Source: Cyanophora paradoxa CCMP329 (taxonomy: Eukaryota > Plantae > Glaucophyta). Taken from it: 64,000 nucleotides of DNA. A model generated the notes under the pieces. It made no database searches and had not been told where the DNA came from. It saw nothing but the letters and a program-made list of their open reading frames with translations. The position numbers and the translations under genes are program-made. Within the stretch, counting starts at the first letter, position 1, and each line of letters begins with the position of its first letter. Below are positions 4,451 to 59,320 of this stretch, piece after piece. The stretch is taken from contig QPMI01000393.1 in the NCBI GenBank assembly GCA_004431415.1, positions 1-64,000 on the forward strand, in the 5' to 3' direction.

Positions 4451-4794
4451 CGCTAGCGATATCGATATCGATAGCCGTGTTTGTAAGTTGTAAGTGCCAA
4501 GGTGCATCCACGATATGCGCATGCGCTGTTTGCAATTGGGTCCGGTGATGCGGCCGCATGCGCATGACACTGCGGCCGCGGGCATGCGCATGCTTTTTTA
4601 CATTTATGTATTTACATTGCATACTAGTACTTGCAATTGCGCATGTAAACTAGAGCGAAAAATGCCAGCAGCTTTCCCCTGCAAGGGAGGGGACGCCTGC
4701 AACTTAAGCTATCTGGGATGCAAATTAAGGGGTACGGTGAGGTTGAGAGTTGGATAGAGTTTGGGGGATAGCTCGAGCTCGAGCCTATATATAT

Positions 4795-6487
4795 CTAACT
4801 GCGGGCGCGCTGCGGCGAGAAGGCCCCGGAGGGGGCGAGCGGCGGGGCCGGCGGCTGCATCTGGTAGCCGCCGAAGGCCGCGGGGGAGGAGGCCGTGGCG
4901 GCGGGGTACAGGGAGCTGGAAGGGGCGTGCTGGAGGTCGCCGTCCTCGAGGCGGGCGGAGAGGGGCAGTTCCGACTCGTGCAGGAACCGAACCCGCTCCC
5001 GCCCCATCCGCAGCTCCATCCGCTCCTGGAGGGGGGGTACGCGTACGTATCAGCGGGGTACGGCGGCCCTGGACCGGAGGGGTACGGGTACGCACCAGGT
5101 CGATGGTCATGCGGAACTTCATGAGGAGGTCCAGGCCTGCGGGGGCGGAGGGGGCGGGGGTTACGCGATCGGAAAGGGGGGTACGCGGTCAAGGGAATCG
5201 GGAGGGGTACCGAAGAGGAGGTCGATGGATGGATCCTCAAGGATCGTGAAGGAGGCGGGCAGGATCGTCTCTCCGAACTGGGTACAGCAATGAGGAAAGT
5301 CAGACGGGGTACAACACAAGTAAAGCGCAAGGAGAGGGGGGTACGCGCCTTCAGGTCGGAGAGGTGGACCTTGCCGATGATGCGCGCCATGCCCTGTGGG
5401 GGGTATGCAGTGAGGGGGCTGCGGGGCCTCGTCGAGGACGGGTACAGGCGCGCACGACGCCGCGAGCGACCCCTTGGAACCGGTTGTCGATCAGGCGGGC
5501 GAGTCTGCGCCGGGGCGGGTCGGAGGGCTCAGAGGAGGGACGGGCGTCCGAACGGAGAGCGAGAGGAGAGCCGCGGGGCCGCCCGCCCGCCCGCTCGCCG
5601 CGGCGCACCCGCAGCGCTGGGCGCAGGGAAGGGACATAACCGACGTCTGCGCTCCCGTATCCACAAAGGCCTTCACCGGCGTCCCGTTGACCCTCACGTC
5701 TATGTACAGCCTGCGGGCAAAGTCGCTCCGCGGGGGCGGGGATCAAAGCTGGGAGCAGGCGGCGCACATGTTCAGCTTCACAAAAGACTCCGGAGAGACT
5801 TCGTACGCCGCCTCAAGGTTCGCGTCTGCGGGCGGCCGCGCGGCCGATTCGCGTCAGCTCCCGGAATCGATCCGTGCGCGCGTGCACGTGCGGCGCGGCG
5901 CGGCGTGCTCGCCTATGTTCCGGCGGCGGATTTCCTCCTCTATCCTCCGCTGCGCCGCGAGCTCCTCGGGGCTGATGTCGATGCTGGGCGCCCGCGAGAT
6001 CTGCGGCTGCTGCTGAAGCGGCGGCGCGCGCTGCTGCATGAAGGGAGACGCCGGCTGTCCATACGGCGGCCCGTACGGCTGCTGCTGGGGAGGAGGCTGC
6101 GGCGCCCTTGCGGGGCTGCCCATGAAGCCGGGGCCGAAGCCGAACGGGCCCGCTCCGAGGGGAGAGCTCATCAGCCCCTGCAAGCGCGGGTCAGCGAGGC
6201 GCGCGCGGGGTGCCATCGCGCGCTCAATTTCATGCCCCGCCGACCCCCTCCGCTTCGACCGGACCGACTAGCACACCGCCGCGGCCGGCGGTCAAGGGAC
6301 CGACCTGGCTGGGAAACGTGTTGTGCGTGAGCTTCGCTGCAAGCGCTGCGTCCTCCTCCTCCTGCACAGCCCTTGCGAGCGCCTCGTCTGTCGTCTCATG
6401 CGCCGGCATGCTGCTGGGGCCGCCGTTCTGCGATCTGCTGCGGTCGCGGTCGGATCTGGAGCTGCCGCCGAGGAACCCGAACACCAT
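4795..6487 (-). CDS. DDI1: DDI1-like retroviral-type aspartyl protease, multi-exon
   Basis: [84 protein letters not shown]: the DDI1 RVP domain with catalytic DTG. Confidence 0.85.
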
Positions 6488-6598
6488 GGCGTCAACCGAC
6501 GTCAAGCTGCGCTTTTCACATGCACCAGACGACTCGAGAAAGTTCTCCTCCAGCTAATAAGCTCCGGTACCCGTCACGCGTTCAACCCCGGGTCGACG

Positions 6599-7096
6599 AT
6601 GTTCCGCGCTGCGAGGAGAGTGCTCGCGGCGGCGGCAGACGCTGCGGCGGCACCGGCCGCACGCCCGCCGAAAGCCTGGACGGGTCCGCCCCGCTTCGCC
6701 GCGCTCGTCTTGCCGGCCTCCACCGCTGACGCCTGCTCGCCTACGCAGAGGAGGAGGTGATTAAACAGATCTTCAAGAGCTCGGGGAAGCTCGGCCAATC
6801 GTCGGTCTCCAAGTTCACCAGCGTCGAGGAGCTCCTGAAGTGCGATACATTCGCGCTGAAGGTGCGGCACTCCTCAGAAGCGCCGAAGCGCTGCGACCGG
6901 GGTGCTGACGCGCCCTCCGCGCCCGCAGGAGAAGGGCGTGCCGCCGAAGGTGCGCAAGGCGGTCCTGGCCAAGATGCACAGCATGCGGACGCGGCTAGCC
7001 GTCGCGAACGAGAAGGGGATCCCCATCAACCCGCGGCCGCTCCCCTCCGCAGCAGCCGAGGGCGCAGCCGCGCCGGCAGAAGGGGCGAGCGCGTAG
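6599..7096 (+). CDS. Mitochondrial IGR-domain protein (mS41/Fyv4-like), 3 exons
   Basis: N-terminus MFRAARRVLAAA looks like a mitochondrial presequence. The core KFTSVEELLKCDTFALK/EKGVPPKVRKAVL resembles the IGR/SAM-like mS41 motif. Confidence 0.6.
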
Positions 7097-7574
7097 GCAG
7101 GTGCTAGATGCGTCAGGGCTTCGTTGTACTATAGGAATTCATCACGATAGCTTCATCTCTCGATCGTTTGCGCGGGGGAGAAGCCGCCGCGTGTTAATCG
7201 GTCTCTCGCGTCAAGCGGCTGGGGCAGGCCCGGGGCAGCCCACCCTTGAGCTCCCAACCGCTGGAGTTCCTTGCATACTGCCCCCCGTACCGTTATCATT
7301 CCCCTCTCTTCATGGGAGAAGATAGCTAAAGGCGCCCCGCCCAACCTTCAAGCCGGACCCGGCCCCCCATCCGCCCCGCATGCTGCTATAAGGAGCACTC
7401 GCAAATCAAATTGAAACAGGCACGCGCTTAATCTCGGGAGTCTCGCCCGAGCTGGCACCCGACCGACCGCGCACGCGCACGCGCACACACGCGGGGGGAG
7501 CCGCCGGGCGTCTAGATCTAGATCTGTACATGGCTAAGGGGGCCGAGGCCAGGCCCAAGGCCTAGGCCTAAGGC

Positions 7575-26490: not shown

Positions 26491-29400
26491 ATGGGCGGTC
26501 GAGGCAGCAGGAGTGGCCTGCTCCTCGCCCTCATCGGCCTTGCCGCTCTGGCCATCGCCGACGCCCAGCTCAAAGAGTACCGCACCGGCGATGGAGTGCG
26601 TTCCGTTTGACCTGCCTTTGTGCCTCATCTATCCCGCCCGCCTGCGCCGCGGCCCCGCCACCGATCCGAAACGCTCGTCACCCACGCTCCGCCCGACGCG
26701 CAGACGGGAAACAACGCCAAGAAGATCAACATGGGGAAGGAAGGGGCCCGGTTCTACCGGACCCTGCCCGGTGCCCAGCTTCCTCCGGCGCCCCTCGTGC
26801 CAGCCGTTTCCTCACGCCCTGGCAGCCTATTACAGCGACGGCATGAACATCCCGGTTCCCAATGTGTCGCCGGTGCGTCGCAGTGCCGGCCGACGCGGAT
26901 GGTCCCGCTCAGCTAGAGGTTGCGAACTACTCCTCGCTGACCCGCGCGTGCCCGCACAGCGGCTCGTGTCCGAGCGACTCTTCTCGCGGGGCCCGTTCGC
27001 GTACAACCAGCAGTCGATTTCCTTCATGGCTGCCGCCTTCGGACAGTGCGTCGCGCTCTTCCGCCCGTCGGCCCGCGATCCGCTCAGCCGCGCCGCTCCG
27101 CAGGTTCGTGGCTCACGACCTCATACTGACGATGGACACCGCGGAGCCGTGGCCCATCCCGGTCCAGCTCTGCGACCGCGTGATGGATCCCACGTGCGAC
27201 GGCTACAACATCACGTTCGCGCGCCTGAAGTACGACCCGGCTACGGGGAACGACCTTGAGGCGCGCGTGCCGCTCAACGGACAGACCTCGTTCCTCGACG
27301 CTTCGACGGGTGCGATCCGCCATCCACGCGCTCCGCTCCGCTCCGCGCCCGCCTCGCCGCCGCGCCCAGCGCCCGCCCCTTCTGACCGGCCGCCGCAGTC
27401 TACGGCCCGAACGACGCCCGCTCCCGCCTCCTGCGCACTTTCACGTGCGTTGGCCCCTAGCGCCCGGGCGGCCGACCGCCCCGCTCGATCCGCCTGACCG
27501 GCCGGGGGCCACCGCTGTGCAGCGGGGGCGAGCTGATCGAGGACCCCACCGACGGCTGCCCCACGAACCCCAACGGCCACGCGATGGACGGCCACAACGC
27601 GTTCACGAAGCAGCGGCTGACGGGGGACGTGCGCGGCAACGTGAACCCCGGCATTCTGGCCGTCCACTGCACGTTCGTGCTGGAGCACAACTGGTGGGCG
27701 CGCAAGCTCGCCAAGGCGAACCCGTCCTGGTCGGACGAGGTGCTCTACCAAGAGGCCCGCGCCCGTGTCATCGCCGAGGTCCAGGCCATCACCTACCAGG
27801 AGTACATCCCCGTCGTGCTGGGGTACGCGGTTTCCGCGGCTCCCGCCGTCGCGTCGCCGTCGCGCCGCCGCCGGGCCGGGCCGGGCCGGCCTGACGCCCC
27901 CGCAGGCAGCTGGCGTCGCAGATCCCGGCCTACTCGGGGTACAAGGCCGACGTGGACCCCAGCGCCGACCTCTTCTTCGCGATCGCTGCGTACCGGTACG
28001 GCCACTCGGGCATCAACTCGCTGTACCTCCGGCTCGAGAAGGACGGCTCCATGATCCCGGGCGGGCCCGTGCTGCTCCGCAACGCCTTCTTCAACCCGTC
28101 GTACCTCATGGACGGCGGCATCGCGTCGCTGCTGCGCGGCCTCATCGTGCAGCCGGAGGCCCTCATCGACACGACGATGGTCGACGACGTCCGACAGGTC
28201 CGCGAGCGCCGCGCTCGCTCGGCGCCCCGTTCGTTCGCCCGCCCGCCCGCTCGCTCACGGCCGTCCCCGCCGCAGTTCCTCTTCGGGCTGCGCTCCGACC
28301 TTGCCGCCATCGACATCCAGCGCGGCCGCGACGTCGGCCTGCCCCGCTACCGCCGCGCCCGCCAGTACTACGGCCTCTCCGTGCCCACCTCCTTCGGTGC
28401 CGGCCCCTTCCCGCTCCGCTCCGCTCCGCCCCGTTCCGCGCTCACGCCGCCCCGCCCCGCCCCGCCCCGCCCCGCAGCGGACATCACAGACGATGTCCAG
28501 GTGCAGCAGGCGCTGGCGGACGCCTACGGCCACATCGACAACGTCGACGCGTGCGCGCAGCGCCTCGGCGCGATCTAAGGCGATCCCGAGGCCGCCGAGC
28601 GCTGACGGCCCCCCGCAGCTGGGTGGGCGGCCTGGCGGAGAAGCACGTACCCGGGGGCCTGGTGGGACCCCTCTTTGCGGCCTCCATCATCGAGCAGGCG
28701 ATCCGCACGCGGGACGGCGACCGCTTCTGGTTCGAGGGCTACCTCCCCGCCGAGCTCGTCGCCGAGATCAAGTCCACGACGCTCTCGGACATCATGGCGC
28801 GTGCCGTCCCCGGCATCGGCGGCTCCGGCGTGCGCACCTCCCTCCCCGCTCGCTAGCCCTTCGTAGTCGGATTCCGACCTGATCCCGTCCGTCCTCGCTC
28901 GCCGCAGGCCATCCCGCGGCAGGCGTTCCGCGTGCCGACGGCGGGAGCCTACTGCTTCACGGGCGCCTGCCCCAACGCCGGCCCGTCCTCGCCAGCGACC
29001 GCCCCGACGGGGACGCTCCCCTCGACGGGCGCCGCCACGCCTGCGCCGGTCATCACCAACGGGACGGACTCTTCCTCCTCCTCCTCCTCAACGACCACGG
29101 CGCCGGCGGCGTCGTTCGTCACCAAGGAGATCTCGGACTCGCTGACGTTGAAGCACTGGCCGATCGAGAGCAACCAGGTGCAGATCGAGTTCTCGCTCAA
29201 GGGCAAGGGCTGGGTCGGCATCGGCATCGGCTCGGGCATGGTCGGCGCAGACATGACCATCTGCCGCTACCCGGACCCCGCCGCGTGCGTCGCCGCTGCG
29301 CCCCCTCCCGCTCGCGACTCTCCTCACTCACGCCCGCCGCGCCGCGCAGCACGGCCGGCGTATGCGAGGACTACTCCAGCGGGGGGTACGTCGTTCCCGT

Positions 29401-32400
29401 CAAGAAGGGTACCCAGACGAGCACACTGGTGCGCCATGACCACGTACCCCTGCCCCGCGCCTCTTTCAAAGCTCACGCGCCGGGCGCCAGGTCTCGACGG
29501 CGCGCGACTCGTCGACGACGACGTACACCTTCAAGCGTCTCGTGGGCACGAGCGACCCGGCGGGTGAGAGAGAGCCGACCAGGCCCTTCTCTCGCCACAA
29601 AGCCGAATCCGTCGCCTCACTCGCTGCGCCCGACGACGTCGCGCAGGCAAGTCGATCTCGACGTCGGGCACGACCAACGTCGTCGTGGCGTGGAGCACCG
29701 ACTCTGACACCCTCGCCTACCATGTGCGCGCCGCCCCTGCGGCGTCCGCCCGATCGTCGCGCCGTCTCACGTGGGGCTGCTTCCACGCGACAGGGCCCCA
29801 ACCGCTTCATCGGGACCGTCGATTTCACGGCGGCGCAGGCCGCCTCGACCACGTCCACCACGACGACGTCGTCCTCGTCGGCTTCCTCGTCGACCTCCTC
29901 CTCGTCCTCGTCCTCCTCCTCGTCGTCCACGGCGTCAACGACAACGACGACGACGTCGACGGGCACGACGACGACCGGCATGGGCTCGGGATCGGCGACG
30001 GTCACGGGCTCCTCGGCGCGCACGTTCACGGGCGTCCACATCATGCACGGCACGGCGATGTTCGCCGTCTGGGGCGGGCTCGTCCCCGCCGCCGTCTTCA
30101 CCATGCGCTACCTGAAGCACACGTCCTTCTGGCTCACCTTCCACAAGGGCGGCATGACCCTCTCGGCGGCGCTCACCTTCTCGGCCGTCGGCTCCGTCCT
30201 CTCCATCGGGAACCAGACGCCGTACCACTTCGTGCTGGGCGTCTGCATCGCGTCGCTGCTCGCCGTCGAGGTGGTCCTGGGCGTCATCACCGCCTACTTC
30301 CACTCGTCGGAGAAGGCGTGGGGCCTGCGCTCGATCCTCAAGCGCCTGCACCCGATCGTCGGCTACCTGCTCATCCTCCTCGCGATGGCAAACGTGTGCA
30401 TCGGGCTCAACCTCATGCAGTCGCCCTACTGGGCCATCGGCGCCGCGTGGCTCGGCTTCCTCCTCGTCGCGTTCGGCATCGCCGAGGTCCGGCTGCAGCG
30501 CGAGCGGCGCCAGTCGGCGGACGCCAAGTACCGCATCGCGGACCTCATGCCGCGCAAGCTGACGCCGCTCACTGTTGAGGAGGTCCGGCAACGCGACCCG
30601 CCTTCGCGGCCGTGGCCGGCGCTGACGTCGATGTCGCCCGCGCCGCCCACGCCGCGCAGATCGACCGGAACATCAAGCTGGGCGCCAAGTGGGTCACCAT
30701 GGGCCCCTACGTCTACGACGTCGGCGAGTTCATGCACGACCACCCGGTACCCCTTTTCCCGCCTCGGAGATGGCGGTACCCCCCTTCCGACCCGTTTGCG
30801 CCGCGCAGGGCGGCCTGAACTACCTCCTGCGGTGCGTGGGCCGGGACATCGGCTACTACTTCAACGGGTCCGAGTCGCTGGACGGCGACCGGCCGCACGT
30901 GCACGGGCGGCGCGCCCACGAGATCCTGGCCCGGCTCGCCGTGGGCATCATCGACAAGAACGCGGCAGCCGCCGGCAACGACCTGATGGTGCACACGGGG
31001 CGCGACCGGAGCAAGCGCGGCAGCATCAGCACGGTCGGGTACGAGAGCAAGGCGGGGCGGCGGCGGCGCGAGGAGAGCGAGGGGGCGCCGGGGAGCCCGG
31101 ACGCCCCATCCGACGACGGGTTCGAGAACCTGTCGGACCGGGAGGGCAAGCCGGCGCGGCGGCGGCAGCGGGACCTGCCGCCCATCAAGCTGAAGGGGCG
31201 CCACCGCAACCAGGTGGTGCCCGTCGACGACGGCGCCGGGAACGAGCACGCGCCGCCGCGCCGCGCGCCGGCCCCGCGCCGCTCTGCCACCGTCGCCTCG
31301 CCGTCGTCGCCGCCGCAGTCGCCGCCGCTCGGGCCGCAGCGCGGAGGGCGGCCCGTAGCCTCCGTCTCCTCCACCTCCTCCGCCGCCTCCCGAGAGTCGG
31401 AGGCGGCCAAGGAGCCGGCCCCCGGCGACGCCCTCATCATCAACCTCTCCACCGCCGCCGCGCCGCCCCGCCCCGCCCGCCCCGGCCCCGCGCCGGCCCC
31501 GGCCCCGCCCCCGCGCTGCCCGCCGCCGCCAAGCGGCCCTCCCTGGGCTCGTCCTCCCAGCCGGCGGCCTCGGGCCCCGTCGGCTCGTACACGCTCATCG
31601 AGCGGGAGCTGGTCACGAAGACGGGCAAGCCGGTGGCGCGGCTGCGCTTCCGGGCGCCTCGGCGGCCGCCCTCGACCAAGAAGGACGTCCGGATCATGGG
31701 GGAGTACTATGAGGTCTTCGCCACCGTCGACAACCAGGAGGTGCCTAAAAATACACTAAAATACACGCCTTTCAATTCCACCTAACAACCGAACGCGCGC
31801 CGCAGATCTCGCGCTACTACTCGGTGTGCCAGGTCAACATCGAACCCGAGGACGAGGAGGGCGAGGGCGTCATCGACCTGTACGTGAAGCGGTACCCCAA
31901 CGGGCGCGTCTCGACGTTCCTCCACACGCTCCCGAGTGCGTGTTTACGCGTACCCCTGTCCCCCGCCCCCCCCCCTCCTCCCCCGCCCTGCCCCTCGCTC
32001 CTCCTTTCGTGCCGTCCGAGGCTGAGCGGAGCGGCCGCCTCTCGCGCAGTTGGGCAGACGGTGCGGATGACGGGGCCGATGGGGATGGGCCTGCGCCTCA
32101 CGCCCCACACGCGCGGCAACCTCGTCGCCATCACCGCTGGTGCGCCGCGCCGTCGTTCTTCGATCCCGACGCCGTCGTTCGTCGATCCCGACGCCGTCGT
32201 TCGATCCCGACCGCAGGGACGGGCATCATCCCCTTCCTGGACCTGATCTACCACCTCACCTTCTCCCCCTCCTCGAATGTCACGCTCCTCCTCATCGCCT
32301 GCTTCGAATCCGCGGCGGACATTCTGCTCCACGAGTGGCTCGAGGCGTGCAACGCGCACGCCGCCGGGTCGCCCGAGCGCCGGCTGGAACTGCACATCGC

Positions 32401-32605
32401 TCTCAAGACGGCGCCGCCGGACAGCCACTGGGACCTCGAGAAGCACCACATCACGGGCCGCGTCACGCCGGCCATCATCGACGGCCTGCTGCCCGTCGGC
32501 GGGCCCGAGTCTCTGTACATCTGCGGGAACCAGCGCTTCAGCATGGAGATGGGGCGCGTGGTGGCGACTCTCAAGATCAGCCCGCAGCGCGTCGTCGTCC
32601 TCTAG
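26491..32605 (+). CDS. Signal peptide + animal-type heme peroxidase + DOMON + cytochrome b561 + cytochrome b5 + FAD/NAD(P)H ferredoxin-reductase-like fusion protein
   Basis: Peroxidase: YRTGDG/TGNN, FGQ/FVAHD, TSFLDAST/VYG, GDVRGN, AAYRYGHS, IQRGRDVGLP, RDGDRFWFE. DOMON: GWVGIGIGSGMVGADM..LAYH. b561: IMHGTAM, FHKGGM, YHFVLG, LHPIVG. b5: VYDVGEFMHDHP/GG..HVHG. Reductase: SRYYSV, LYVKRYPNGRVSTFL, TGPMG, AGTGIIPF, YICG. Confidence 0.85.
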
Positions 32606-45943: not shown

Positions 45944-46203
45944 AAAAAGTGTCACAGAGTTGCATTGTGTCCAATTGAACAATCGATGAGATTGCTGATT
46001 TGCATTTTTGCACCCAAAAACTGTCACAGAGTTGCATTATCTCCCATTAAACAATCGATTAGATTGCGGGATTTTCTATTGGAATATATCGGAACTGCAT
46101 TATGTCCAATTAAACAATCGATGAGATTGCGGATTTATATTTTAGATTGAAAAAAGTGTCACAGAGTTGCATTATCTCCAATTGAACAATCGATTAGATT
46201 GCA
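45944..46203 (+). repeat. Four ~50-bp direct repeats (AAAAGTGTCACAGAGTTGCATTATCTCCAATTGAACAATCGATTAGATTGC consensus) with ~20-bp variable spacers
   Basis: Copies near 45944, 46015, 46093 (partial) and 46150. Confidence 0.85.
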
Positions 46204-46315
46204 TATGTTCTATAAAACAGAATAATTGAGATCAAGTGTGACAGGTAGTATTCAAATGATATTCAGTAAGAGATAGTTTTGTTTTTGAGAAAGTCAGTAA
46301 GAGGGGTGGAATGTC

Positions 46316-46418
46316 TGTGACGCCTGTGACGGCTGTGACGCCTGTTTTCAGAAGTCTGTCATTTTTGAAAATTTTAAAAAGTTTGAAAGTAGGTGTCACA
46401 GGCGTCACAGGCGTCACA
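46316..46418 (+). repeat. Inverted-iteron module 1: (TGTGACGCC)x3 - AT-rich core - (GGCGTCACA)x3
   Basis: 103 bp, read directly from the sequence. Confidence 0.9.
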
Positions 46419-46606
46419 CTCAATTAAATTAGGTGTCACAGCGAAATTGCAGACCATTTCCAGTAAGACAACTTCGCATTTTCAAAAAGGTTGATTAATG
46501 GATAGTGTTTTGTAGGTGTCAGAGGTGTCACAAGACGGATTTCAGTAAGACAAGAATATATTTTCGAAAATCTCAGTAAGAGAAAGAGATTCCATTTTTA
46601 ATTGGG

Positions 46607-46709
46607 TGTGACGCCTGTGACGGCTGTGACGGCTGTTTTCAGAAGTCTGTCATTTTTGAAAATTTTAAAAAGTTTGAAAGTAGGCGTCACAGGCGTCACA
46701 GGCGTCACA
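46607..46709 (+). repeat. Inverted-iteron module 2, near-identical to module 1
   Basis: 103 bp with the same AT core, TTTTCAGAAGTCTGTCATTTTTGAAAATTTTAAAAAGTTTGAAAGTA. Confidence 0.9.
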
Positions 46710-46942
46710 GTCAATTAAAGAGGCGTCACAGTCAATTAAATAGGTGTCACAAGACGGATTTCAGTAAGACCATCTGAAATTCTGAATATCTCAGTGTCAA
46801 CTAACTCGGAAATCGCAATACTCTATGTTTCTCCGATTTCTCCAACCCTGAAAACACACCTGTTATTCTCTCATCTATCTCATGAGATACTCTCGTTTCG
46901 CCAAAAATTGACAAACGATTTCCCATCATGCTGTAAAGGAAA

Positions 46943-47210
46943 GATGCCGATTAACCAGCAATATCACAATTTCCATGGGACTTACATCTTGATTGTGAAT
47001 AGAATGCAAGATCATTATGAGATCTTTCAAGAGATGGGATTGCGAATTACAAGGAGATCAACTCTTTGTAGATTCTTGAAAAGGAATGGTGCTAAATGGG
47101 ATAAGACAATTCGCCGATGGTATACAGAAGATCCAAAGAGTCCCCTTCTTAATATTTTCGAGACAGATGGAGAGTTCTTCTATCAGGATCGGTTTAATCA
47201 TTACCAATAG
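46943..47210 (+). CDS. Small viral protein with a DUF5710-like motif
   Basis: LKRNGAKWDKTIRRWY resembles the DUF5710 GAxWDxxxxxWY motif. Confidence 0.45.
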
Positions 47211-48125
47211 CCAGAAACTCCAACTGGAATGAGTTGTCAATCCCATTCATGTCTACAAGATCACCATAATAATCTCGAAACTCAACTGTTAACTCTCTAA
47301 TCACCAGGTTTCGATCGGTTATTTTTATGTATTCACTGTGCTCTCCACTGTGATAAACATACTGTCCAATATCTTTACTCAATTGCAATCTGAGAATCGC
47401 CCCTTGATTCTGTGGTTGTGATCTTGGGACAATATTGTGGTTTGTAGCAAATGGGGAGAGTTCTTTAATGTGCATGTATAAATACTGTTCTGCATTCATG
47501 TCTGTCATCTTGGATGCTTCTAACTTGTAGTTTAAGCGAGATGCCTCGAATTCATATCCTGTGAATGTGATTCCCCATTGGGGATGGTTTGGGGTGATTG
47601 GGATTCCTGCAAAATAGAGGAAATTCTCGGGGCATATAAAGACCTTGCAGACTCTGGGAAATCGTAGGTTTGCTCAATTGAAGCGACCCACTCCACAGAA
47701 CTAACCCCAAGAAGTTTACCCAATCTCTGTGTAGATGCTACCATCTCGAATTGAACATTACTGTAAAACTCCAATTTGTAGGAAGTAGGGTTGTAGTAGA
47801 CCTTGAATGCATATGTGAGATTGTTGCTTCCAGTAAAGGTGAAATTCAGACCATAATTATATGGACTGGTGACCCCGAAATGCCCTTGATTAATATAACC
47901 ACTTGGGAGAAGGTATACCTGTTTGGTTTCAGAGATGCCTTGGTAGTAGAATCTGACAAGAAGGTGATCTGTTCCAATGGAGTTATAGATGCTGTTGGGG
48001 ATTTCTGCATACAAAACTCGACATTCTCTTGGTTTAGTCACTGGGGTTGTGAGTGAAACTTTGTAGGAGTTTTCTATTTGTCCATCTGATCGGTCTCTGC
48101 TATCTATATTGACCAGCCGAATCAT
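47194..48125 (-). CDS. Minor capsid/penton-like protein 1 (one frameshift near 47530-47610)
   Basis: N-terminal IDSRDR...VLYAEIPNSIYN and C-terminal YLYMHIKEL..LTVEFRDYYGDLVDMNGIDNSFQLEF are typical of PLV/NCLDV single jelly-roll penton proteins. Confidence 0.75.
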
Positions 48126-48153
48126 TTTAATATATGTTTATAGATAAAAGAAG

Positions 48154-49162
48154 ATGCCTGTGGATTACATCGAAGTGAGCTCTTTCAATACAATTTCGGG
48201 AGATGGACCAACTTCGAGTTTTATTGCTCGCCTCCCCAGCACCTATGAATTTGTGAGAGCAGTAAGACTGGTTTCAGCAGAATTTTATAACAGCATTCCC
48301 ATGGTGAGTGGTGAAACCAAAGTAGGAGATGTGACAATTGATAATGCAATCTACCTTTATTGGTCTGAATATTATTCTGGTGCAGGAAGCACTGGTATTC
48401 CAACTGATCGACCTGCTGCTGATTATGAATCATGGAAACACATTGTGATAAGTCGCAGCACACCCATTCAAAACCACCAACAACTGGTGAATGTAATTAA
48501 CTCCAAACTTGCATTGAGAGAGCCACCAGTAGCAATTCGCTGTAAATGGGATGATACACTGAAACGAGTAATATTCCATTCCACCATACCGTTTTACCTG
48601 GCTTTCTCAACTGCAATAAACCCAACCCAGGCGCAGATTCAGAGGTTTTTGAGTTCTGCTCGACTGCTTGGTCTTGATCCTGGGAGATATGGTAACACCC
48701 CAATCCAATCACAAGTTTATAATACTCTGACTGATGGTATCTTTACTGGGTCGATGGTGCATGGTATCATATCTTCATTTGAACCTGAAAAGACCAGGAT
48801 AGTGTTCTGTTTGTGAGAGTAAAGGAGTTGGGTGATCTGGTTCAATGTGGTGATGGTCTCCTCACTGGATATTTCCACAAAATCGTTGTTCCAGATAAAG
48901 ATTATGGTGAGCATGTCGTTTATAATTCGACAGAAGCCATCCGATTTATAAATACTATAACAAGAATCTGGGACTTTCCACATTTTCGGTTGATATTGTG
49001 AATGCAGTTAATGAACCAATTGATTTCGAGGGTCAACCTGTCCACCTCACCTTCGAAATTCGATATGGTGATGAACCTGCTGGTGATCCTGTGTACGAAT
49101 ACTTCAAGAGGAGAATGGCGGAAACACATCCATCTTATCCGGTTATTGCGAATTTTGCGTAA
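48154..49162 (+). CDS. Minor capsid/penton-like protein 2 (two frameshifts)
   Basis: SSFIARLPSTYEFVRAVRLVSAEFYNSI..ARLLGL..CLRVKEL..FSVDIVNAVNEPIDFEGQPVHLTFEI follows the same motif series as penton 1. Confidence 0.65.
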
Positions 49163-49216
49163 AATCAAGGATCATTGGTGAATTTTTTATGTTGCAGTAT
49201 AATAAAAGAGATAATC

Positions 49217-50589
49217 ATGGATATTACTTCGACCCTCCAACGTCTTTCTCTGAAAGAAGCTCTAACAACCCCGGAAGAAGCCAAGGCGTTCTTCTTGGAC
49301 AACTCTCTCATGCTTGGTCTTGAATCCAAGTCGAAGCCAGTTCTTGTTGTTGTGAACCCAAGCAACACTTTCGAGAATAATGCTGGAAATCGCATTTCTT
49401 TCAAGCTCCCTCGCTACAATTTCTGTGGAAAACTCGAACTTGCGTTTGACCTTCCAGCTGTCACTTTTGCTGGTGATACCGACCTTGTTCGCAATGGATA
49501 CGTTCGCCCAGTTGGTGCTCTTGTCTCTCGACTTGAAATTACCTATGGATCTTACACCTTCCATGTGCCTTCTGATTTCCTTGCTCATTTCCCTCTTATC
49601 TATTACAGTGAGGATCAACTCGCCAAGAAGAAGCGTTCAATGGGAATGGTTCATGGTATCCCTGCCCATGGAACCAACCGACTTGGTGGGTCATTTTTCA
49701 CTGAAATCCCAGTCCCATGGCTAAACCACTACCTACCTCTTGGTGCTCTCTCAGGAGAAATGGTGGTAACTGTCTGGTTCAAGGATGCTGGAAAGGGTTA
49801 TGTTGAGACTTCTTATGGTGGTCGTGCTCTTCCAGTTGTTGGTGGAACAGCTGCTGATAAGACAGAGGATGATGGACTTGGTGCTACTGCTAATGCTACT
49901 CTTGCCCATGTTGGTCAACAGATCACCACTTTTGGAATTGGTGCAACAACAACCCCGAAATTAAAGTCACTTCTCCTCGTCTTTACATGCATGCTATTAA
50001 TGTTTCTGATGAACTGTTTGCTACTGTCATTGAGAAGGTGAAGACCACTGGTATGGCTATTCCTGCTCTGGATATTGGTTTTGTTGACAGTGTCAATTTT
50101 GCTGCAAAAGGCAATGCTCAACCAAATCGTATTAACCTGTCACAGATCTCTGGTCTTGTCTATGGTCTTCTTGTTTCAGTTCGTGATGCCGCAGGTATTG
50201 ATGGTTTCAATGGTTCCCACAGTGTCCTAAAAACGCATGCTAACTCAAAAGACATTACTTTCACTGTTGAAATTAATGGTCAACGTCTCTATGCTACTGA
50301 GCCCATCCCTCTCCTCAAAGGTGCCGAATTAATTGCGGATGCCTTCAAGTGCTCGAATATGGACAAGGTTGCAGACAAATATGTCCTCAGTGGTCTACCA
50401 TTCTGTGTTGATGGAGAGAAAGCGATTCGCAACATTGCCCAGTCTGGCTATGTTGATCTCACGAACTCCTCCTCTTCTTTCCTTACTCTATACATGCCTT
50501 CTGACCAGACAATCACAGTTAATGTTCGTGCTCTCATGCACAGTTTCATTATTGTTGACAAAGATGGTCTTCGTCGCATTAATCTGTAA
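49217..50589 (+). CDS. Major capsid protein, double jelly roll (frameshift ~49960-49990)
   Basis: About 450 aa, beta-rich: GNRISFKLPR..LELAFDLP..LVSRLEITYG..IPVPW..YLPLGAL..EMVVTVWFK..SGYVDLT..VNVRALMHSFIIV. It sits between the pentons and the ATPase. Confidence 0.75.
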
Positions 50590-50651
50590 AACCATTATCA
50601 GTAACGTTTCGTTATTTTTATCTATCTTTAATAAGAAAGATCTACAAAGCC

Positions 50652-51433
50652 ATGTCTGACGTTCCCGAATTTAATGCTGCTGAGATGATTAACCCCCTTT
50701 TCGCGTATTAGCAATCGGAAAAAGCGCGACGGGCAAGTCAGAAGCCGTAAAATATTGGCTAAAACAACTTCACGATGCGAAAAAGTTAGATGTTGTTCTT
50801 GTTATAAGTGGGACATCATTCAATCATTTTTGGGATGATGTCGCAACATTACAGCTCGGTAAATGGGATGCGCCTTACATCGCTAAACTTCTCGATGAAA
50901 GACAAGAGAAAATTGAGAAAGGAGAACCCGTTAATCAATTATGTGTTGTTCTCGATGATCTTATAGACAATGAGATTGTAGACCTTACCCGTGATAAAAT
51001 TATTGGATCTCTGTATTCGCGCGGCCGCCACTCGGCGATTACAATTTTCTGCATAACTCAGAAACTGCGTAAGGTTTCTTCAACCATTCGCGTCAATTCG
51101 GATTATGCAATGTTCCTCAGTGCCGCCAATCGCAAAGAACTGGAAGCCATTGAAGAAGAATACAATATCATGCGGGATAAAGACGCTTTCTATAAGATGT
51201 TTGAGGAATACGTTCACTCCTATCAGTTTCTCATTTGGAGTTCTGCGAATTATTCGGTGGAATACTACGTTGATAAAGCGGAACTCGTTAAAGACTTTAA
51301 GTTTCCTCGGTTCCACAGGAAGCCCAAAAAGAAAGAGGACGAATTACCACCTCCACAGAAAGAGGAAGCCCCCAAAGAGGTCAAGAGTGGTGTTCATTCG
51401 AATAAACTGATGCGATATAAGAGAGGTTTATAA
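50652..51433 (+). CDS. A32-like DNA packaging ATPase (frameshift in the homopolymer near 50695)
   Basis: Walker A VLAIGKSATGKS, Walker B CVVLDD, SRGRHSAITIFCITQ and IRVNSDY. Most of this frame is missed by the ORF track. Confidence 0.9.
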
Positions 51434-51461
51434 AATAATCTCTGCTTCTAATAAATATACA

Positions 51462-52196
51462 ATGCCTTCCAAACGCAAAGTTGGTGTTCCTGCTGGTGCT
51501 ATGTCATATTCTGCATCCTCTGGAACCGGTTCTATTAACACAGAGCCCATGAAATTCAATGGTGTCAATGAAGTTAAAGCATCACAGCAACAAGAAGATC
51601 CCCTCAATGCTGCTTACGAAGAATCACCAGATGATAAAGCGCCCCAGACATCCACCAGTGATCAACTCAATATTTCGCCCGAAACCTCTAAGATGAAGGC
51701 AGTTGGTGAAGGTGCTCGTCGAATTATTGGTGCTGCTGATGACAAAGGACTGGGTCTCCAAGATCTCTCACTTGCTCGCAAAGGTGAAGGTGTCTCCAAG
51801 GAATCAGACAAGGTAATTCAATCCATGGCTGGTGAGGTGACCTACAAGGTCGCACCTACACAGAATATCCACCGAATTCCCAAAGCCCAATGGGACGAAA
51901 TGACTGCGAAACTGAAAGATCTGGAAGCGAAATCCAGTGCTCTTGAACAGTATGTCTCTGAGAAGAAAGAGAGAGCGAAATTGAAGGAGATGCTGCGAAA
52001 GGAGGTGTATAGAATGGGAATTACTGGTCTCCCAGATAAGCAATTCATTGGTAAGAAAGAGACTCAAATTGATGAGCAGGCAGTTGATGAGATGAAGACG
52101 AAAACCCAGAAGGGCACCATTGAACCTGGTGCTACCAAAGCAGAGGTCGACAAAGGTGTTGCCCCCACAGTATATAAACGACGAGTATGGCTTTAA
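51462..52196 (+). CDS. Hypothetical Lys-rich viral protein, 244 aa
   Basis: Intact ORF with an AT-rich upstream context and a coiled-coil segment; no family recognised. Confidence 0.7.
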   Translation: MPSKRKVGVPAGAMSYSASSGTGSINTEPMKFNGVNEVKASQQQEDPLNAAYEESPDDKAPQTSTSDQLNISPETSKMKAVGEGARRIIGAADDKGLGLQDLSLARKGEGVSKESDKVIQSMAGEVTYKVAPTQNIHRIPKAQWDEMTAKLKDLEAKSSALEQYVSEKKERAKLKEMLRKEVYRMGITGLPDKQFIGKKETQIDEQAVDEMKTKTQKGTIEPGATKAEVDKGVAPTVYKRRVWL

Positions 52197-52223
52197 TTAT
52201 CTCGCATTAAGAGAGAGAGCATC

Positions 52224-52457
52224 ATGGATTTCTTGCGAAAAATCATAGAGATGTTTAATCTCCACATTGTGAGCAATTGTCACAGTGGCTGCTGTGATAC
52301 AAAAGTCGAAATCGAATTCTCTGACACTGAAAGTCATGGATCTGGTGGTAGGCGATTATCCACAGACTCGGTGGATTTCGAGGAGCATATTAAAACAGAG
52401 ACTGTGAGGCGACGCTCTGTATCTTTCACAGATCCGAAATTAAATCTCGGTAATTAA
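52224..52457 (+). CDS. Small viral protein (HIVSNCHSGCC motif)
   Basis: Intact 77-aa ORF directly after the previous gene. Confidence 0.55.
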   Translation: MDFLRKIIEMFNLHIVSNCHSGCCDTKVEIEFSDTESHGSGGRRLSTDSVDFEEHIKTETVRRRSVSFTDPKLNLGN

Positions 52458-52657
52458 TATCGAATGCTCAGTCTCTCTGAGATCTATGCTATCCTTGAAA
52501 GGAAATCCGCTGAATATGCAACAGAAGACGCAATAAAAAAGCGTAGACAGGAACTGGTCTCGATCTGCAAAAAATGACAAGGGATTTAAGGGTAAGGTGT
52601 GTTTGATTGGTGAACCGGACAAATTATTTTCTCGTCCCATTATAAGGAACATATCAA

Positions 52658-52885
52658 ATGGAAACTGAATCTGTGGTCGAATTCGAACTTGCAATGAGCG
52701 AGGTGGATCCCAATGAGAGGAAAAGGTTGTATGACCGCTTGTATTTCCAGAAACGCTATCAAGATGAGGAATTTCGAGAATTATATCGTAAAAAGGCACT
52801 GGAACGATATTATCGCAGGAAAGCTGCTGAGATGGATCCCAATAATCCAGTGAAACGCCCAGTAGGTCGTCCCAGAAAATACTGA
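52658..52885 (+). CDS. Small basic AT-hook DNA-binding protein
   Basis: KKALERYYRRK..KRPVGRPRKY; GRPR is the AT-hook core. Confidence 0.7.
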   Translation: METESVVEFELAMSEVDPNERKRLYDRLYFQKRYQDEEFRELYRKKALERYYRRKAAEMDPNNPVKRPVGRPRKY

Positions 52886-53078
52886 ACCGCCCCAAAGTCC
52901 CAGATATCCGCTGAATCCTTTTTGTTACCATGATCAATCGACTTTTCGATGGATCATTACCATACATCGAGCGCCAATCGGAGAACCCAAAGGTATTTAA
53001 AGGTTAGGCGCCAAAAAATGACAAGCGACCGGAGAAATTAATTTCTCCATTAAGGATAAGAAGCCCCCGATTGTTGAA

Positions 53079-55441: not shown

Positions 55442-55539
55442 ATAAACAGAATCGATTCTAATACTGATTGAATTTCTTATTTTTTAAAAACCTTACTGTA
55501 AATGGTTTGTGTGACAGCTGTGACACCTTTTTAATTGAG

Positions 55540-55642
55540 TGTGACGCCTGTGACGCCTGTGACGCCTACTTTCAAACTTTTTAAAATTTCAAAAATCTAC
55601 AAACCTCTGAAAACAGGTGTCACAGGCGTCACAGGCGTCACA
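55540..55642 (-). repeat. Inverted-iteron module 3, inverted relative to modules 1-2, ~100 bp downstream of the helicase stop
   Basis: 103 bp: (TGTGACGCC)x3, core CTTTCAAACTTTTTAAAATTTC.., then (GGCGTCACA)x3. Confidence 0.9.
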
Positions 55643-55794
55643 CCCAATTAACCACAGACTCCCCCCTGTGGGTCGATGACTTTTTCGATTCTTTATCGGA
55701 CAATATAAAAACGTATCGTAAATCGGTGTGTTTTGACAAAAATTGACTGGCGATTTAAGGGATCATTGCGTTTTCCCTTTGACTTTGACAGAAC

Positions 55795-55986
55795 ATGGAT
55801 TATTTCGACGAAATTCAGCGGCAGCTGGTCGAAAAGAATGATATTGCAGAGGTAGCGGAATATATTGCAAAGATCAGAGCCAGTAATGGTATACCATATC
55901 AAAAGAAGCGATTGTATGCAAGCAGACTCGACACAGTAAATGTATATGTCCCCAAAGGCACGAATGTGCGAATCATTAGAACCTGA
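55795..55986 (+). CDS. Small hypothetical viral protein
   Basis: 63-aa ORF upstream of PolB. Confidence 0.4.
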   Translation: MDYFDEIQRQLVEKNDIAEVAEYIAKIRASNGIPYQKKRLYASRLDTVNVYVPKGTNVRIIRT

Positions 55987-56042
55987 AAAATGCGAAATGC
56001 GTTCAAATTGCCCAAAAATAATATGTTCCCTTAAAGTAAAAG

Positions 56043-59000: not shown

Positions 59001-59320
59001 TTGATTCCAGGTAAATATAAAAACGAGTTTCCCAATGCAAAGATTGTGGAGTATGTAGGTCTGAGATCGAAACTCTATGCTTTCAGAACTGAGACCTTTG
59101 ACAAAATAAAAATGTCTGGAACCTCCTCAAAAGAGGTTACTTTGATGATTTCAAGAGATGCCTGTTTGAAGGCATCACCAAAACAGTAGCAGTAGTAAAC
59201 AAGCGAAGGCAAGACCACAACCTATATGATTTGGAGAGCAGAAGGGTGGCTCTAAACCAACTCGATAGCAAAAGGAAGATATTAGACGATGGAATTCACA
59301 GCATTCCATTTGGGCTCTAA
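56043..59320 (+). CDS. Polinton-type protein-primed DNA polymerase B (about four frameshifts)
   Basis: NVKNIDGQDCFKYAIL, CYIC..VRDHCH.SG..ACRNCNL, GLDPAHYVSAPGLSWDAML, IRGG, LDANNLYGYAL, KLMNNAIYGK, HDTDS, GLRSKLYA, DSKR.I..DGIHSIPFG. Confidence 0.92.

What the first reader, a model, noticed from the sequence alone, without database searches (positions are those of the whole stretch)
26491..32605. Self-contained transmembrane redox chain: peroxidase-DOMON-b561-b5-flavoreductase in one protein
One spliced ORF joins an extracellular heme peroxidase, a heme-type DOMON (Met and His ligands present), a four-His cytochrome b561, and then cytosolic cytochrome b5 (HPGG plus second His) and an FNR-type FAD/NAD(P)H domain. 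The predicted topology gives a continuous wire NAD(P)H > FAD > b5 > two b561 hemes > DOMON heme > O2 or peroxidase. This parallels DUOX (peroxidase + NOX) but uses unrelated parts: b561/DOMON replaces the NOX membrane domain, there are no EF hands, and b561 proteins normally rely on ascorbate rather than a fused reductase. It is a candidate convergent H2O2-generating and -consuming enzyme, or a surface metal reductase. I know of no characterised protein with this architecture.
Basis: partly seen in the sequence, partly recalled or inferred. Interest (0 to 1): 0.88.

Follow-up and report, generated by a model that had tools for sequence, protein, structure and literature searches.

The report
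Fused peroxidase–haem-wire–reductase membrane protein
A Cyanophora gene strings an outside peroxidase, a three-haem membrane wire and an inside NAD(P)H-driven reductase onto one messenger RNA. Uncharacterised relatives occur in many microbial eukaryotes, so it looks like an unstudied parallel to the NOX/DUOX enzymes.

Summary
The domains are real and in the stated order: signal peptide, animal-type haem peroxidase, Met/His DOMON, four-His cytochrome b561, cytochrome b5, and a cytochrome-b5-reductase-like FAD/NAD(P)H domain. The window is Cyanophora paradoxa. The public gene model g9780 (1507 aa) already carries all six domains.

Spliced RNA contigs, one of 5304 nt, cover the whole gene. A DNA run shows no splice joints.

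A predicted structure gives five membrane helices. That puts the peroxidase and DOMON outside and b5 and the reductase inside.

The architecture is not unique. About 30 divergent cluster representatives share the full layout and about 35 lack only the peroxidase. Named members come from arbuscular mycorrhizal fungi, chytrids and a stramenopile. Two are single uninterrupted ORFs. I found no paper describing the fusion.

One caveat remains. The b5-to-reductase reading frame is not continuous in this assembly. The public model bridges it with an atypical 53-nt intron that the listed RNA contigs read straight through. Third-codon-position G+C (GC3) places the frame change inside an A/T-free tract (31452-31516) whose length differs between the DNA and the RNA.

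The NAD(P)H-to-outside electron path is well supported by inference. The final acceptor is unknown, and H2O2 generation is thermodynamically doubtful. The scan noted this same stretch before (s1-528645), not other DNA.

The parts
26491..26595 (+). Exon 1: start codon, signal peptide (hydrophobic core at residues 5-27 of P0001) and the first residues of the peroxidase domain
   Evidence: Exact match to P0001 residues 1-35. Hydropathy peak at 9-27.
26491..28829 (+). Animal-type haem peroxidase domain, exons 1-11 (P0001 residues 30-514). It has distal Gln102/His106 (27114-27116), distal Arg223 (27632-27634), proximal His319 (28003-28005) and the Ca-site T..D.S. The ester-link positions are Ala105 and Val226.
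   Evidence: Pfam An_peroxidase E 2.8e-130. PDB 8s6c E 4e-105 and DdPoxA 6erc E 9e-86, with residue alignments. Exon joints in RNA. Splice sites.
28908..29153 (+). Ser/Ala/Thr/Pro-rich linker between the peroxidase and DOMON (P0001 about 515-600). It begins at the end of exon 11.
   Evidence: Composition. No Pfam hit.
29154..29820 (+). Haem-type DOMON beta-sandwich, exons 12-16 (P0001 about 601-729). Ligands are Met629 (29238-29240) and His720 (29721-29723).
   Evidence: Pfam DOMON E 1e-14. M629 is kept in 93% and H720 in 95% of 61 relatives. Fold Z 14.2 to the DBH DOMON and 12-13.6 to CDH/PDH cytochrome domains.
29830..30003 (+). Ser/Thr-rich stalk between DOMON and the membrane (50 of 81 residues in P0001 715-795 are S or T)
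   Evidence: Composition. pLDDT is below 50 in the model.
30013..30522 (+). Cytochrome b561 core with five transmembrane helices. Haem ligands are His805 (30046-30048), His837 (30142-30144), His865 (30226-30228) and His906 (30349-30351).
   Evidence: Five helices in the AlphaFold model, pLDDT 86.6. Z 13.3 to b561 4o6y and 12.9 to Dcytb 5zle. Profile hit to both at E 5e-5, with the four His aligned. The His are kept in 93-100% of relatives. Pfam b561 is below its cut-off (18-19 bits against 23).
30562..30952 (+). Cytochrome b5 domain. It starts in the same exon as the last b561 helix (to 30582), continues in exon 17 (30660-30746) and in the start of exon 18 (from 30809). The H-P-G-G motif is split by an intron. 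The second ligand lies in H-V-H at 30896-30904.
   Evidence: Pfam Cyt-b5 E 3e-9. Z about 11 to cytochrome b5 structures at rmsd 1.8-1.9. HPGG is kept in 98-100% of relatives (H and P in 100%).
30953..31584 (+). Disordered Arg/Pro/Ala/Gly-rich linker, about 200 aa. The listed RNA contigs are collinear with the DNA from 30808 to 31446.
31306..31358 (+). The 53-nt intron of the public gene model. It is probably not an intron.
   Evidence: The listed RNA contigs read straight through it. Its ends are GTCGCC..GTAG, against GTGCG..CAG in the other 20 introns, and it is the shortest. GC3 stays in the upstream frame beyond it.
31452..31516 (+). A/T-free (CCCCG)n-like tract in which the coding frame changes by one base. 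Its length differs between the assembly and the RNA contig.
   Evidence: Positions of A/T bases by codon phase. GC3 windows. The tool masked 31447-31521, and the RNA contig holds 33 nt where the DNA has 75. No GT or AG occurs inside.
31585..32605 (+). FAD/NAD(P)H reductase domain of the cytochrome-b5-reductase type. It spans the end of exon 18 (to 31740) and exons 19 (31806-31935), 20 (32050-32139) and 21 (32217-32605, including the stop codon). Motifs are R-Y-Y-S, G-R-V-S and G-T-G-I-I-P.
   Evidence: Pfam FAD_binding_6 E 9e-12 and NAD_binding_1 E 3e-5. Best PDB matches are the NADH-cytochrome b5 reductases 7rom and 2eix, with the motifs aligned. All three introns are seen spliced in RNA.

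Best explanation
This is one gene of Cyanophora paradoxa (public model g9780), transcribed as a single mRNA of about 5.3 kb. It belongs to a widespread, uncharacterised eukaryotic family of self-sufficient transmembrane flavocytochromes.

Layout:
- A signal peptide and five membrane helices put the peroxidase and the Met/His DOMON haem outside.
- The same topology puts the b5 haem and the FAD/NAD(P)H domain in the cytosol.

Inferred electron path: NAD(P)H > FAD > b5 haem > inner b561 haem (His837/His906) > outer b561 haem (His805/His865) > DOMON haem. The b5/b5-reductase cassette takes the place of ascorbate, the usual donor of DOMON-b561 (CYBDOM) proteins. I put about 0.75 on this wire.

Terminal step:
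- My preferred reading (about 0.35-0.4) is that the DOMON haem hands single electrons to the oxidised intermediates of the fused peroxidase. The enzyme would then reduce external H2O2 or peroxides at the expense of cytosolic NAD(P)H, much as a cytochrome feeds cytochrome c peroxidase.
- The peroxidase is catalytically equipped but its haem is probably not covalently bound.

Shown here: the domains, the ligands, the single transcript, the topology model and the conservation. Inferred: every electron-transfer step and the acceptor.
For: - All six domains are found on exon pieces and on P0001.
- Haem ligands are conserved in 61 relatives.
- The model shows a DOMON sandwich, five helices and a b5 fold at pLDDT 86.6. 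The best folds are b561, DOMON/CDH cytochrome and b5.
- Basic residues cluster on the predicted cytosolic loops, and only the signal peptide lies N-terminal.
- The reductase domain is most like NADH-cytochrome b5 reductases, with the FAD and NAD motifs aligned.
- The last b561 helix and the start of b5 lie in one exon.
- A single spliced contig of 5304 nt covers the gene, and the DNA run has no joints.
- The full architecture recurs in about 30 divergent representatives. These include two uninterrupted ORFs (P0021, P0008) and arbuscular mycorrhizal (Glomeromycotina) fungi.
- The CYBDOM precedent for a three-haem trans-membrane path with five helices and Met/His DOMON ligands is HYP1 (PMC10784544).
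- The peroxidase keeps the distal Gln/His/Arg and the proximal His.
Against: - In this assembly the reductase is out of frame with b5. The only bridging intron is unsupported, so the full-length product is not demonstrated for this copy.
- No cofactor binding, redox potential or activity was measured.
- About half of the family lacks the peroxidase. Some members, including the Cyanophora paralog P0002, have lost its catalytic residues. The wire therefore has acceptors other than a fused active peroxidase.
- The long flexible linkers leave the distance between the peroxidase and DOMON haems unknown.
- Pfam b561 scores are below the curated cut-off.
Confidence: 0.55

Rival explanations
1. DUOX-like generator plus user. 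The exported electrons reduce O2 at the outer b561 or DOMON haem to superoxide/H2O2. The fused peroxidase then uses that H2O2 to oxidise external substrates such as halides, phenolics or tyrosines.
For: - The overall logic matches DUOX: an outside peroxidase domain on an NAD(P)H-driven haem wire.
- Some relatives keep a peroxidase domain with degenerate catalytic residues, as mammalian DUOX does. That argues for a role beside catalysis.
- The peroxidase module was gained or lost several times on the family tree.
Against: - From general knowledge, b5, b561 and Met/His DOMON haems sit near 0 to +200 mV. NOX haems sit near -225 to -265 mV, so one-electron O2 reduction would be slow.
- All the haems are predicted to be six-coordinate.
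- Both ester-link residues are missing (Ala105, Val226), which makes chloride oxidation unlikely.
Confidence: 0.25
2. Surface metal reductase. The DOMON haem reduces external Fe(III) or Cu(II) chelates, as plant CYBDOM proteins do, but is driven by NAD(P)H instead of ascorbate. The peroxidase acts independently or protects the site.
For: - The peroxidase-less core (DOMON-b561-b5-reductase) is as common as the full form.
- HYP1 reduces ferric and cupric substrates through the same DOMON-b561 unit (PMC10784544).
- DOMON is also found fused to NOX-type ferric reductases (PMC3591440).
Against: It does not explain the repeated fusion to a peroxidase. No iron-regulation data exist for this gene.
Confidence: 0.2
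3. This particular copy makes a truncated protein (peroxidase-DOMON-b561-b5 plus a tail) without the reductase. A frameshift sits in the slippage-prone GC tract. Electrons would then come from a separate b5 reductase or from ascorbate.
For: - The DNA assembly and the RNA contig both leave the reductase one base out of frame.
- The model's bridging intron is atypical and the listed contigs read through it.
- Without a frame correction the spliced message would stop at 31885-31887.
Against: - The reductase exons keep GC3 of 0.95-0.97 and intact motifs, and all three of their introns are spliced.
- The tract is 65 nt of pure G+C, where both assemblies are weakest. The contigs of one RNA run break there and the DNA contigs do not cross it.
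- Relatives have the fusion in one ORF.
Confidence: 0.2
4. Several neighbouring genes were wrongly merged into one.
For: Contigs alone cannot prove a single transcript. The public model needs one doubtful intron.
Against: - One 5304-nt spliced contig spans everything.
- b561 and the start of b5 share an exon.
- No stop or start signal separates the modules.
- The same order occurs in uninterrupted ORFs elsewhere.
Confidence: 0.03

Closest known systems
CYBDOM proteins (DOMON + cytochrome b561; e.g. Arabidopsis HYP1/CRR, animal SDR2/FRRS1)
   Same: Signal peptide, an outside Met/His haem DOMON, a five-helix b561 with two His pairs, and a three-haem path across the membrane (PMC10784544).
   Different: Known members take electrons from cytosolic ascorbate and end after the last helix. 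Here a b5 haem and an FAD/NAD(P)H reductase follow in the same chain, and a peroxidase precedes the DOMON.
Dual oxidase (DUOX, NOX family)
   Same: An outside animal-type peroxidase domain, a two-haem membrane domain and an inside FAD/NAD(P)H domain in one chain. The peroxidase residues are degenerate in some members of both groups.
   Different: There is no ferric-reductase (NOX) membrane domain, no EF-hands and no extra N-terminal helix. The membrane part is b561 with an added DOMON haem and a b5 haem. The reductase is of the b5-reductase type. It is therefore an analogue, not a member.
b5 + b5-reductase cassettes (Ncb5or/CYB5R4, the nitrate reductase C-terminus, fungal CBBR)
   Same: An HPGG cytochrome b5 is joined to an RxY(S/T)/GTGIxP reductase that feeds a further redox centre (PMC12462446 listed).
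   Different: Those proteins are soluble or peripheral. Here the cassette is welded to the cytosolic end of a transmembrane cytochrome.
Cellobiose dehydrogenase and related flavocytochromes
   Same: A DOMON-like Met/His b-haem domain on a flexible linker carries single electrons from a flavin to an external redox enzyme (fold matches 4qi3, 1d7b, 6jt6).
   Different: CDH is secreted, has no membrane wire, and its flavin domain is of the GMC type.
Short peroxidases of the peroxidase-cyclooxygenase superfamily (PDB 8s6c; Dictyostelium DdPoxA 6erc)
   Same: These are the best sequence matches. The distal Gln/His/Arg, the proximal His and the Ca site are kept.
   Different: Both ester-link residues are replaced (Asp to Ala105, Glu to Val226), and the domain is tethered to a membrane redox chain.
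DOMON-bearing NOX-type ferric reductases (Naegleria, oomycetes)
   Same: An outside DOMON on an NADPH-driven transmembrane haem protein (PMC3591440).
   Different: Their membrane and reductase domains are of the NOX/FRE type, not b561 + b5 + b5-reductase.

Membership tests
CYBDOM (DOMON + cytochrome b561) | Haem-type DOMON with Met and His axial ligands, on the non-cytosolic side | tested here: met
   Pfam DOMON. M629/H720 are kept in 93-95% of relatives. Fold Z 12-14 to DOMON/CDH cytochromes. A signal peptide lies upstream.
CYBDOM (DOMON + cytochrome b561) | b561 core with four His on four consecutive helices, five helices in all | tested here: met
   The Pfam score itself is below the cut-off. 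Chytrid relatives carry precomputed PF03188.
CYBDOM (DOMON + cytochrome b561) | Ascorbate as cytosolic electron donor | not testable with these tools
   A fused b5/reductase suggests a different donor. This needs an assay.
DUOX / NOX | Ferric-reductase-type six-helix haem domain (bis-His on helices 3 and 5) | tested here: not met
   No Ferric_reduct hit on P0001. The membrane fold is closest to b561 (Z 13.3), ahead of NOX5 (Z 11.4).
DUOX / NOX | EF-hand calcium switch | tested here: not met
   No EF-hand family at E<=0.01.
DUOX / NOX | N-terminal extracellular peroxidase-homology domain | tested here: met
   An_peroxidase E 2.8e-130. DUOX1 7d3e matches at E 2e-55.
Peroxidase-cyclooxygenase superfamily, catalytically active peroxidase | Distal Gln-x-x-x-His, distal Arg, proximal His, Ca-binding T..D.S | tested here: met
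   Q102, H106, R223, H319 and T163/D167/S169 align to 8s6c and 6erc.
Peroxidase-cyclooxygenase superfamily, covalent-haem (MPO/LPO-like) type | Asp and Glu that form ester bonds to the haem | tested here: not met
   Ala105 and Val226 occupy those positions.
NADH-cytochrome b5 reductase type (FNR superfamily) | RxY(S/T) and GxxS FAD motifs and a GTGIxP nucleotide motif | tested here: met
   Alignment to 7rom and 2eix. Pfam FAD_binding_6 and NAD_binding_1 are above their cut-offs.
NADH-cytochrome b5 reductase type (FNR superfamily) | Translated in frame with the rest of the protein in this gene | tested here: inconclusive
   There is a frame offset inside 31452-31516, and the model's intron is unsupported.
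Cytochrome b5 | HPGG with a first His, and a second axial His about 25-35 residues on | tested here: met
   H1011-P-G-G is kept in 98-100% of relatives (H and P in 100%). The H-V-H-G-x-x-A motif follows. Fold rmsd 1.8-1.9 to b5.

The most novel reading that the evidence does not exclude
Eukaryotes built a NOX/DUOX-like machine a second time from unrelated parts. This is a family of self-sufficient NAD(P)H-driven transmembrane flavocytochromes (FAD, b5, two b561 haems, a DOMON haem) that repeatedly gained, lost or degraded an outside animal-type peroxidase. The family occurs in glaucophytes, arbuscular mycorrhizal fungi, chytrids, stramenopiles and ciliates. If it works as drawn, it would be the first b561-type protein powered by pyridine nucleotide rather than ascorbate. 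It may also be a surface enzyme that destroys or makes peroxide using cytosolic reducing power. A further possibility is that the slippage-prone GC tract between b5 and the reductase switches the reductase on or off.
Probability: 0.55. Interest if true: 0.85.

Novelty: new variant of a known kind. Interest (0 to 1): 0.72.

Why it matters
Trans-membrane electron export in eukaryotes is currently explained by two separate systems. NOX/FRE enzymes are NADPH-driven. b561/CYBDOM proteins are ascorbate-driven. This family would join the b561 wire to a built-in NAD(P)H supply, and in half of its members to an outside peroxidase.

That gives an independent, testable parallel to DUOX. It could explain how microbes that are little studied in this respect handle external peroxide, iron or copper. 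It is relevant to arbuscular mycorrhizal fungi, which live in the oxidising plant apoplast.

It also offers compact natural single-chain NAD(P)H-to-outside wires for bio-electrochemistry. Finally, the public Cyanophora gene model at this locus contains a probably false intron.

Tried and rejected
I then worked from coordinates only.
- A word-index protein search with P0001 residues 590-1507 returned only the query itself. Low-complexity words probably filled the candidate list.
- Literature searches on combinations of DOMON, b561, b5, b5 reductase, peroxidase, Cyanophora, CYBDOM, flavocytochrome, diatom and fungi found plant and animal CYBDOM work but nothing on this fusion. Iyer et al. 2007 on DOMON architectures is not held. 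An earlier in-silico mention of the core architecture therefore cannot be excluded.
- I looked for any other GT..AG intron of the right length class between b5 and the reductase. None resembles the local GTGCG..CAG consensus.
- I considered a 42-nt intron in the GC tract and rejected it. There is no GT or AG inside, and 42 does not change the frame.
- A hydropathy threshold of 1.6 misses the first two His-bearing helices. The helix count rests on the structure model.
- Separate genes: rejected.
- I did not build or search a joined translation of my own exon model. Window pieces were searched exon by exon by reference. Whole-protein work used the public model P0001 returned.
Full report
**Source and method**

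The window is nuclear DNA of the glaucophyte Cyanophora paradoxa. An exhaustive protein search used the b561 exon (window 30016-30594). It returned a 1507-aa protein at 99% identity (P0001). Its only record is EukProt Cyanophora paradoxa tig00020515_g9780.t1. All 22 blocks of P0001 match the window exactly between 26491 and 32602.

Window pieces were searched exon by exon by reference. Whole-protein analyses used the public protein P0001.

Pfam on single open pieces of the + strand gives the following hits:
- An_peroxidase, four pieces, down to E 1.7e-27
- DOMON
- Cytochrom_B561
- Cyt-b5
- FAD_binding_6
- NAD_binding_1

On P0001 the domains sit as follows:

| Domain | Residues |
|---|---|
| An_peroxidase | 30-514 (E 2.8e-130) |
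| DOMON | 601-710 |
| b561 | 799-925 (18 bits, below the 23-bit cut-off) |
| Cyt-b5 | 982-1058 |
| FAD_binding_6 | 1268-1360 |
| NAD_binding_1 | 1376-1486 |

Nothing else was found. In particular there are no EF-hands and no NOX-type ferric-reductase domain.

Because the b561 call is weak in Pfam, I tested it three more ways:
- A profile of 50 relatives hits the b561 structures 4o6y and 5zle at E 5e-5, with all four His aligned.
- An AlphaFold model of residues 598-1063 (pLDDT 86.6, pTM 0.76) shows a beta-sandwich, a disordered stalk, five long helices and an alpha/beta b5 fold.
- The helical part aligns best to b561 (4o6y Z 13.3; Dcytb Z 12.9), ahead of the NOX5 membrane domain (Z 11.4). The sandwich aligns to the dopamine beta-hydroxylase DOMON (Z 14.2) and to cellobiose/pyranose dehydrogenase cytochrome domains (Z 12-13.6). 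The last part aligns to cytochrome b5 (Z about 11, rmsd 1.8-1.9).

**Ligands**

In 61 relatives that share DOMON-b561-b5-reductase, conservation is as follows:

| Centre | Residues | Conservation |
|---|---|---|
| DOMON haem | Met629, His720 | 93%, 95% |
| b561 haems | His805, His837, His865, His906 | 100%, 93%, 100%, 100% |
| b5 haem | His1011-Pro-Gly-Gly | 98-100% (His and Pro 100%) |

The second b5 ligand lies in an H-V-H-G-x-x-A motif (His1042/1044). This corresponds to the H-S-x-x-A of classical b5.

The reductase domain is most like the NADH-cytochrome b5 reductases 7rom and 2eix. The R-Y-Y-S, G-R-V-S and G-T-G-I-I-P motifs align.

The peroxidase domain is most like PDB 8s6c (E 4e-105) and Dictyostelium DdPoxA 6erc (E 9e-86). 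It keeps the distal Gln102/His106, the distal Arg223, the proximal His319 and the calcium site. The two residues that ester-link the haem in myelo- and lactoperoxidase are Ala105 and Val226. The domain therefore looks catalytically competent, but its haem is probably non-covalent.

**One transcript**

Contigs of three runs of a guessed RNA type carry GT..AG joints at the predicted introns. A DNA run of the same organism carries none. Thirteen of the 20 introns are listed directly. Four more follow from the contig's own coordinates.

One contig of 5304 nt (run X3) lies on exons from 27523 to 32539. It extends 737 nt further 5' and 655 nt further 3'. That is enough for the 557 nt of upstream coding exons plus untranslated ends.

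The last b561 helix and the first residues of b5 are in the same exon, 29794-30582. All confirmed introns have very uniform ends: mostly GTGCG at the 5' end and always CAG at the 3' end.

**One ORF? Not shown at one junction**

- b5 and the following linker are read with codon starts at pos%3=2. The reductase is read with codon starts at pos%3=1.
- P0001 changes frame with a 53-nt intron at 31306-31358. The RNA contigs of X1 and X3 are collinear with the DNA from 30808 to 31446, without gaps.
- That intron is the shortest, and it is the only one ending in TAG rather than CAG.
- No other consensus-like intron of a suitable length exists in the interval.
- Codon-position G+C is decisive about where the frame changes. 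GC3 is 0.95-0.98 in the true frame of control exons. It stays at 0.93-1.00 in the b5 frame up to about 31440. It switches to the reductase frame (0.93-1.00) after that.
- A/T bases avoid the third position of the b5 frame up to 31451 and of the reductase frame from 31517 on. Between them lie 65 nt without any A or T.
- That tract is (CCCCG)n-like and was masked by the read tool. Between the anchors 31446 and 31522 the DNA has 75 nt and the X3 contig 33 nt. The contigs of X1 break there, and the DNA contigs do not cross it.
- Both lengths leave the reductase one base out of frame. Unbridged, the spliced message would stop at 31885-31887.
- Either both assemblies misjudge a very hard tract, or this copy carries a real slippage frameshift.
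- I put about 0.8 on an intact fusion, for three reasons. The reductase exons keep full coding signatures and motifs. Their introns are spliced. Relatives encode the fusion in uninterrupted ORFs.

**Family**

The 153 proteins in hand were the 150 listed search hits plus three cluster members. I scanned them with local profiles built from P0001's domains.
- About 30 representatives of 50%-identity clusters have peroxidase-DOMON-b561-b5-reductase.
- About 35 have the same layout without the peroxidase.
- The rest are ordinary DOMON-b561 proteins or fragments.

Pfam confirms the full set on P0002, P0003, P0008 and P0010.

Named members with the full architecture:
- Two further Cyanophora paralogs
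- The arbuscular mycorrhizal (Glomeromycotina) fungi Gigaspora margarita ('heme peroxidase' KAF0345547.1), Funneliformis, Entrophospora, Acaulospora and Diversispora
- Hyaloraphidium curvatum
- The stramenopile Platysulcus tardus

The peroxidase-less form fills the chytrids. Examples are Spizellomyces punctatus SPPG_00880 and SPPG_02277, Geranomyces, Powellomyces and others, often with an SH3 domain. A ciliate-rich ESM Atlas cluster also matches.

P0021 (in GCA_024449685.1) and P0008 (in a 31-kb Logan contig) are single uninterrupted ORFs of 1418 and 1354 aa. This is the strongest evidence that the fusion is one polypeptide.

On a tree of the DOMON-b561-b5 core, the presence of the peroxidase is clustered but needs five or six gains or losses.

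In several members the catalytic peroxidase residues are lost. These include the paralog P0002 and Gigaspora P0035.

Source names are only 'hypothetical', 'heme peroxidase', 'cytochrome b5 domain-containing' or 'NADH-cytochrome b5 reductase'. Nine full-text searches found no description of the fusion.

**How it most likely works**

Topology:
- There is a signal peptide (hydropathy peak at residues 9-27) and five helices.
- Basic residues lie on the loops after helices 1, 3 and 5.
- The linkers around DOMON are Ser/Thr-rich, mucin-like.
- Together these put the peroxidase and DOMON outside and b5 and the reductase in the cytosol.

By position in the helices, His805/His865 hold the outer haem and His837/His906 the inner one. 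HYP1 is arranged the same way. In HYP1 a continuous three-haem path, five helices and Met/His DOMON ligands were modelled, and ascorbate-dependent trans-membrane currents were recorded (PMC10784544).

The inferred path is NAD(P)H > FAD > b5 > inner b561 > outer b561 > DOMON haem. The b5/b5-reductase cassette is the same supply module as in Ncb5or and nitrate reductase.

The last step is open. From general knowledge (not measured here), b5, b561 and Met/His DOMON haems lie near 0 to +200 mV. That suits high-potential acceptors: peroxidase compound I/II, Fe(III) and Cu(II). It suits O2 poorly. My odds for the last step are:

| Reading | Odds |
|---|---|
| NAD(P)H-powered reduction of external peroxide through the fused peroxidase | about 0.35-0.4 |
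| DUOX-like generator and user of H2O2 | about 0.25 |
| NAD(P)H-driven metal reductase with an accessory peroxidase | about 0.2 |

Two facts warn that the wire also serves other acceptors. Peroxidase-less members are frequent, and some members have degenerate peroxidases.

**Comparison and novelty**

- It meets the structural definition of a CYBDOM protein.
- It fails two defining features of DUOX/NOX: there is no NOX membrane domain and no EF-hands. It is therefore an analogue of DUOX, not a member.
- It is a new architectural variant built from known modules. It is present in public databases and, as far as I could find, undescribed.
- The scan had noted the same stretch once before in an overlapping window (s1-528645), not on other DNA.

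**Surroundings**

From about 46 kb to the window's end the G+C falls from about 0.6-0.7 to 0.40-0.43. ORFs there hit a D5-like primase-helicase, a protein-primed family-B DNA polymerase and a patatin-like phospholipase. This fits the integrated Polinton-like virus noted earlier by the scan.

Noticed in passing
window 46000-64000: A low-GC block (0.39-0.43, against 0.55-0.79 elsewhere) has ORFs hitting a D5-like primase-helicase (53513-55438), a protein-primed DNA polymerase B (57600-59186) and a patatin-like phospholipase with an F5/8 type C domain (62120-63658, minus strand). This is consistent with the integrated Polinton-like virus that earlier scan notes describe.
   Followed up: partly
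window 31306-31358: The public gene model (EukProt tig00020515_g9780.t1) contains a probably false 53-nt intron. It seems to have been inserted to restore the frame. This is a gene-annotation error worth flagging.
   Followed up: yes
window 27329-27349, 28412-28480, 31452-31496: GC-rich short-unit repeats (CGCTC and CCCCG units) recur in two introns of the gene and in the exonic tract where the frame breaks. All 20 confirmed introns are 55-114 nt with near-identical ends (GTGCG...GCAG).
   Followed up: partly
window 32148-32210: Three tandem copies of a 19-22-nt unit lie inside the last intron (family D4).
   Followed up: no
P0042 (JGI metagenome, 4632 aa): This relative has 20 tandem DOMON domains in front of b561-b5-reductase. 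It would be an extreme extracellular haem array if all of them bind haem.
   Followed up: no
P0054, P0085, P0170-P0183 (chytrid relatives): The chytrid DOMON-b561-b5-reductase proteins carry SH3 domains (PF14604/PF00018). This hints at regulated assembly, as with NOX organiser subunits.
   Followed up: no
L001:2489-10257 (GCA_024449685.1 contig JAANST012413853.1): Family members lie in tandem. The full-length ORF (3001-7257) is preceded by a peroxidase fragment ORF and followed by another peroxidase-DOMON gene.
   Followed up: no
P0002 and P0007/P0151/P0152 (Cyanophora paralogs): Cyanophora has at least three genes of this architecture. In P0002 the distal His, the distal Arg and the proximal His of the peroxidase are all replaced.
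   Followed up: partly
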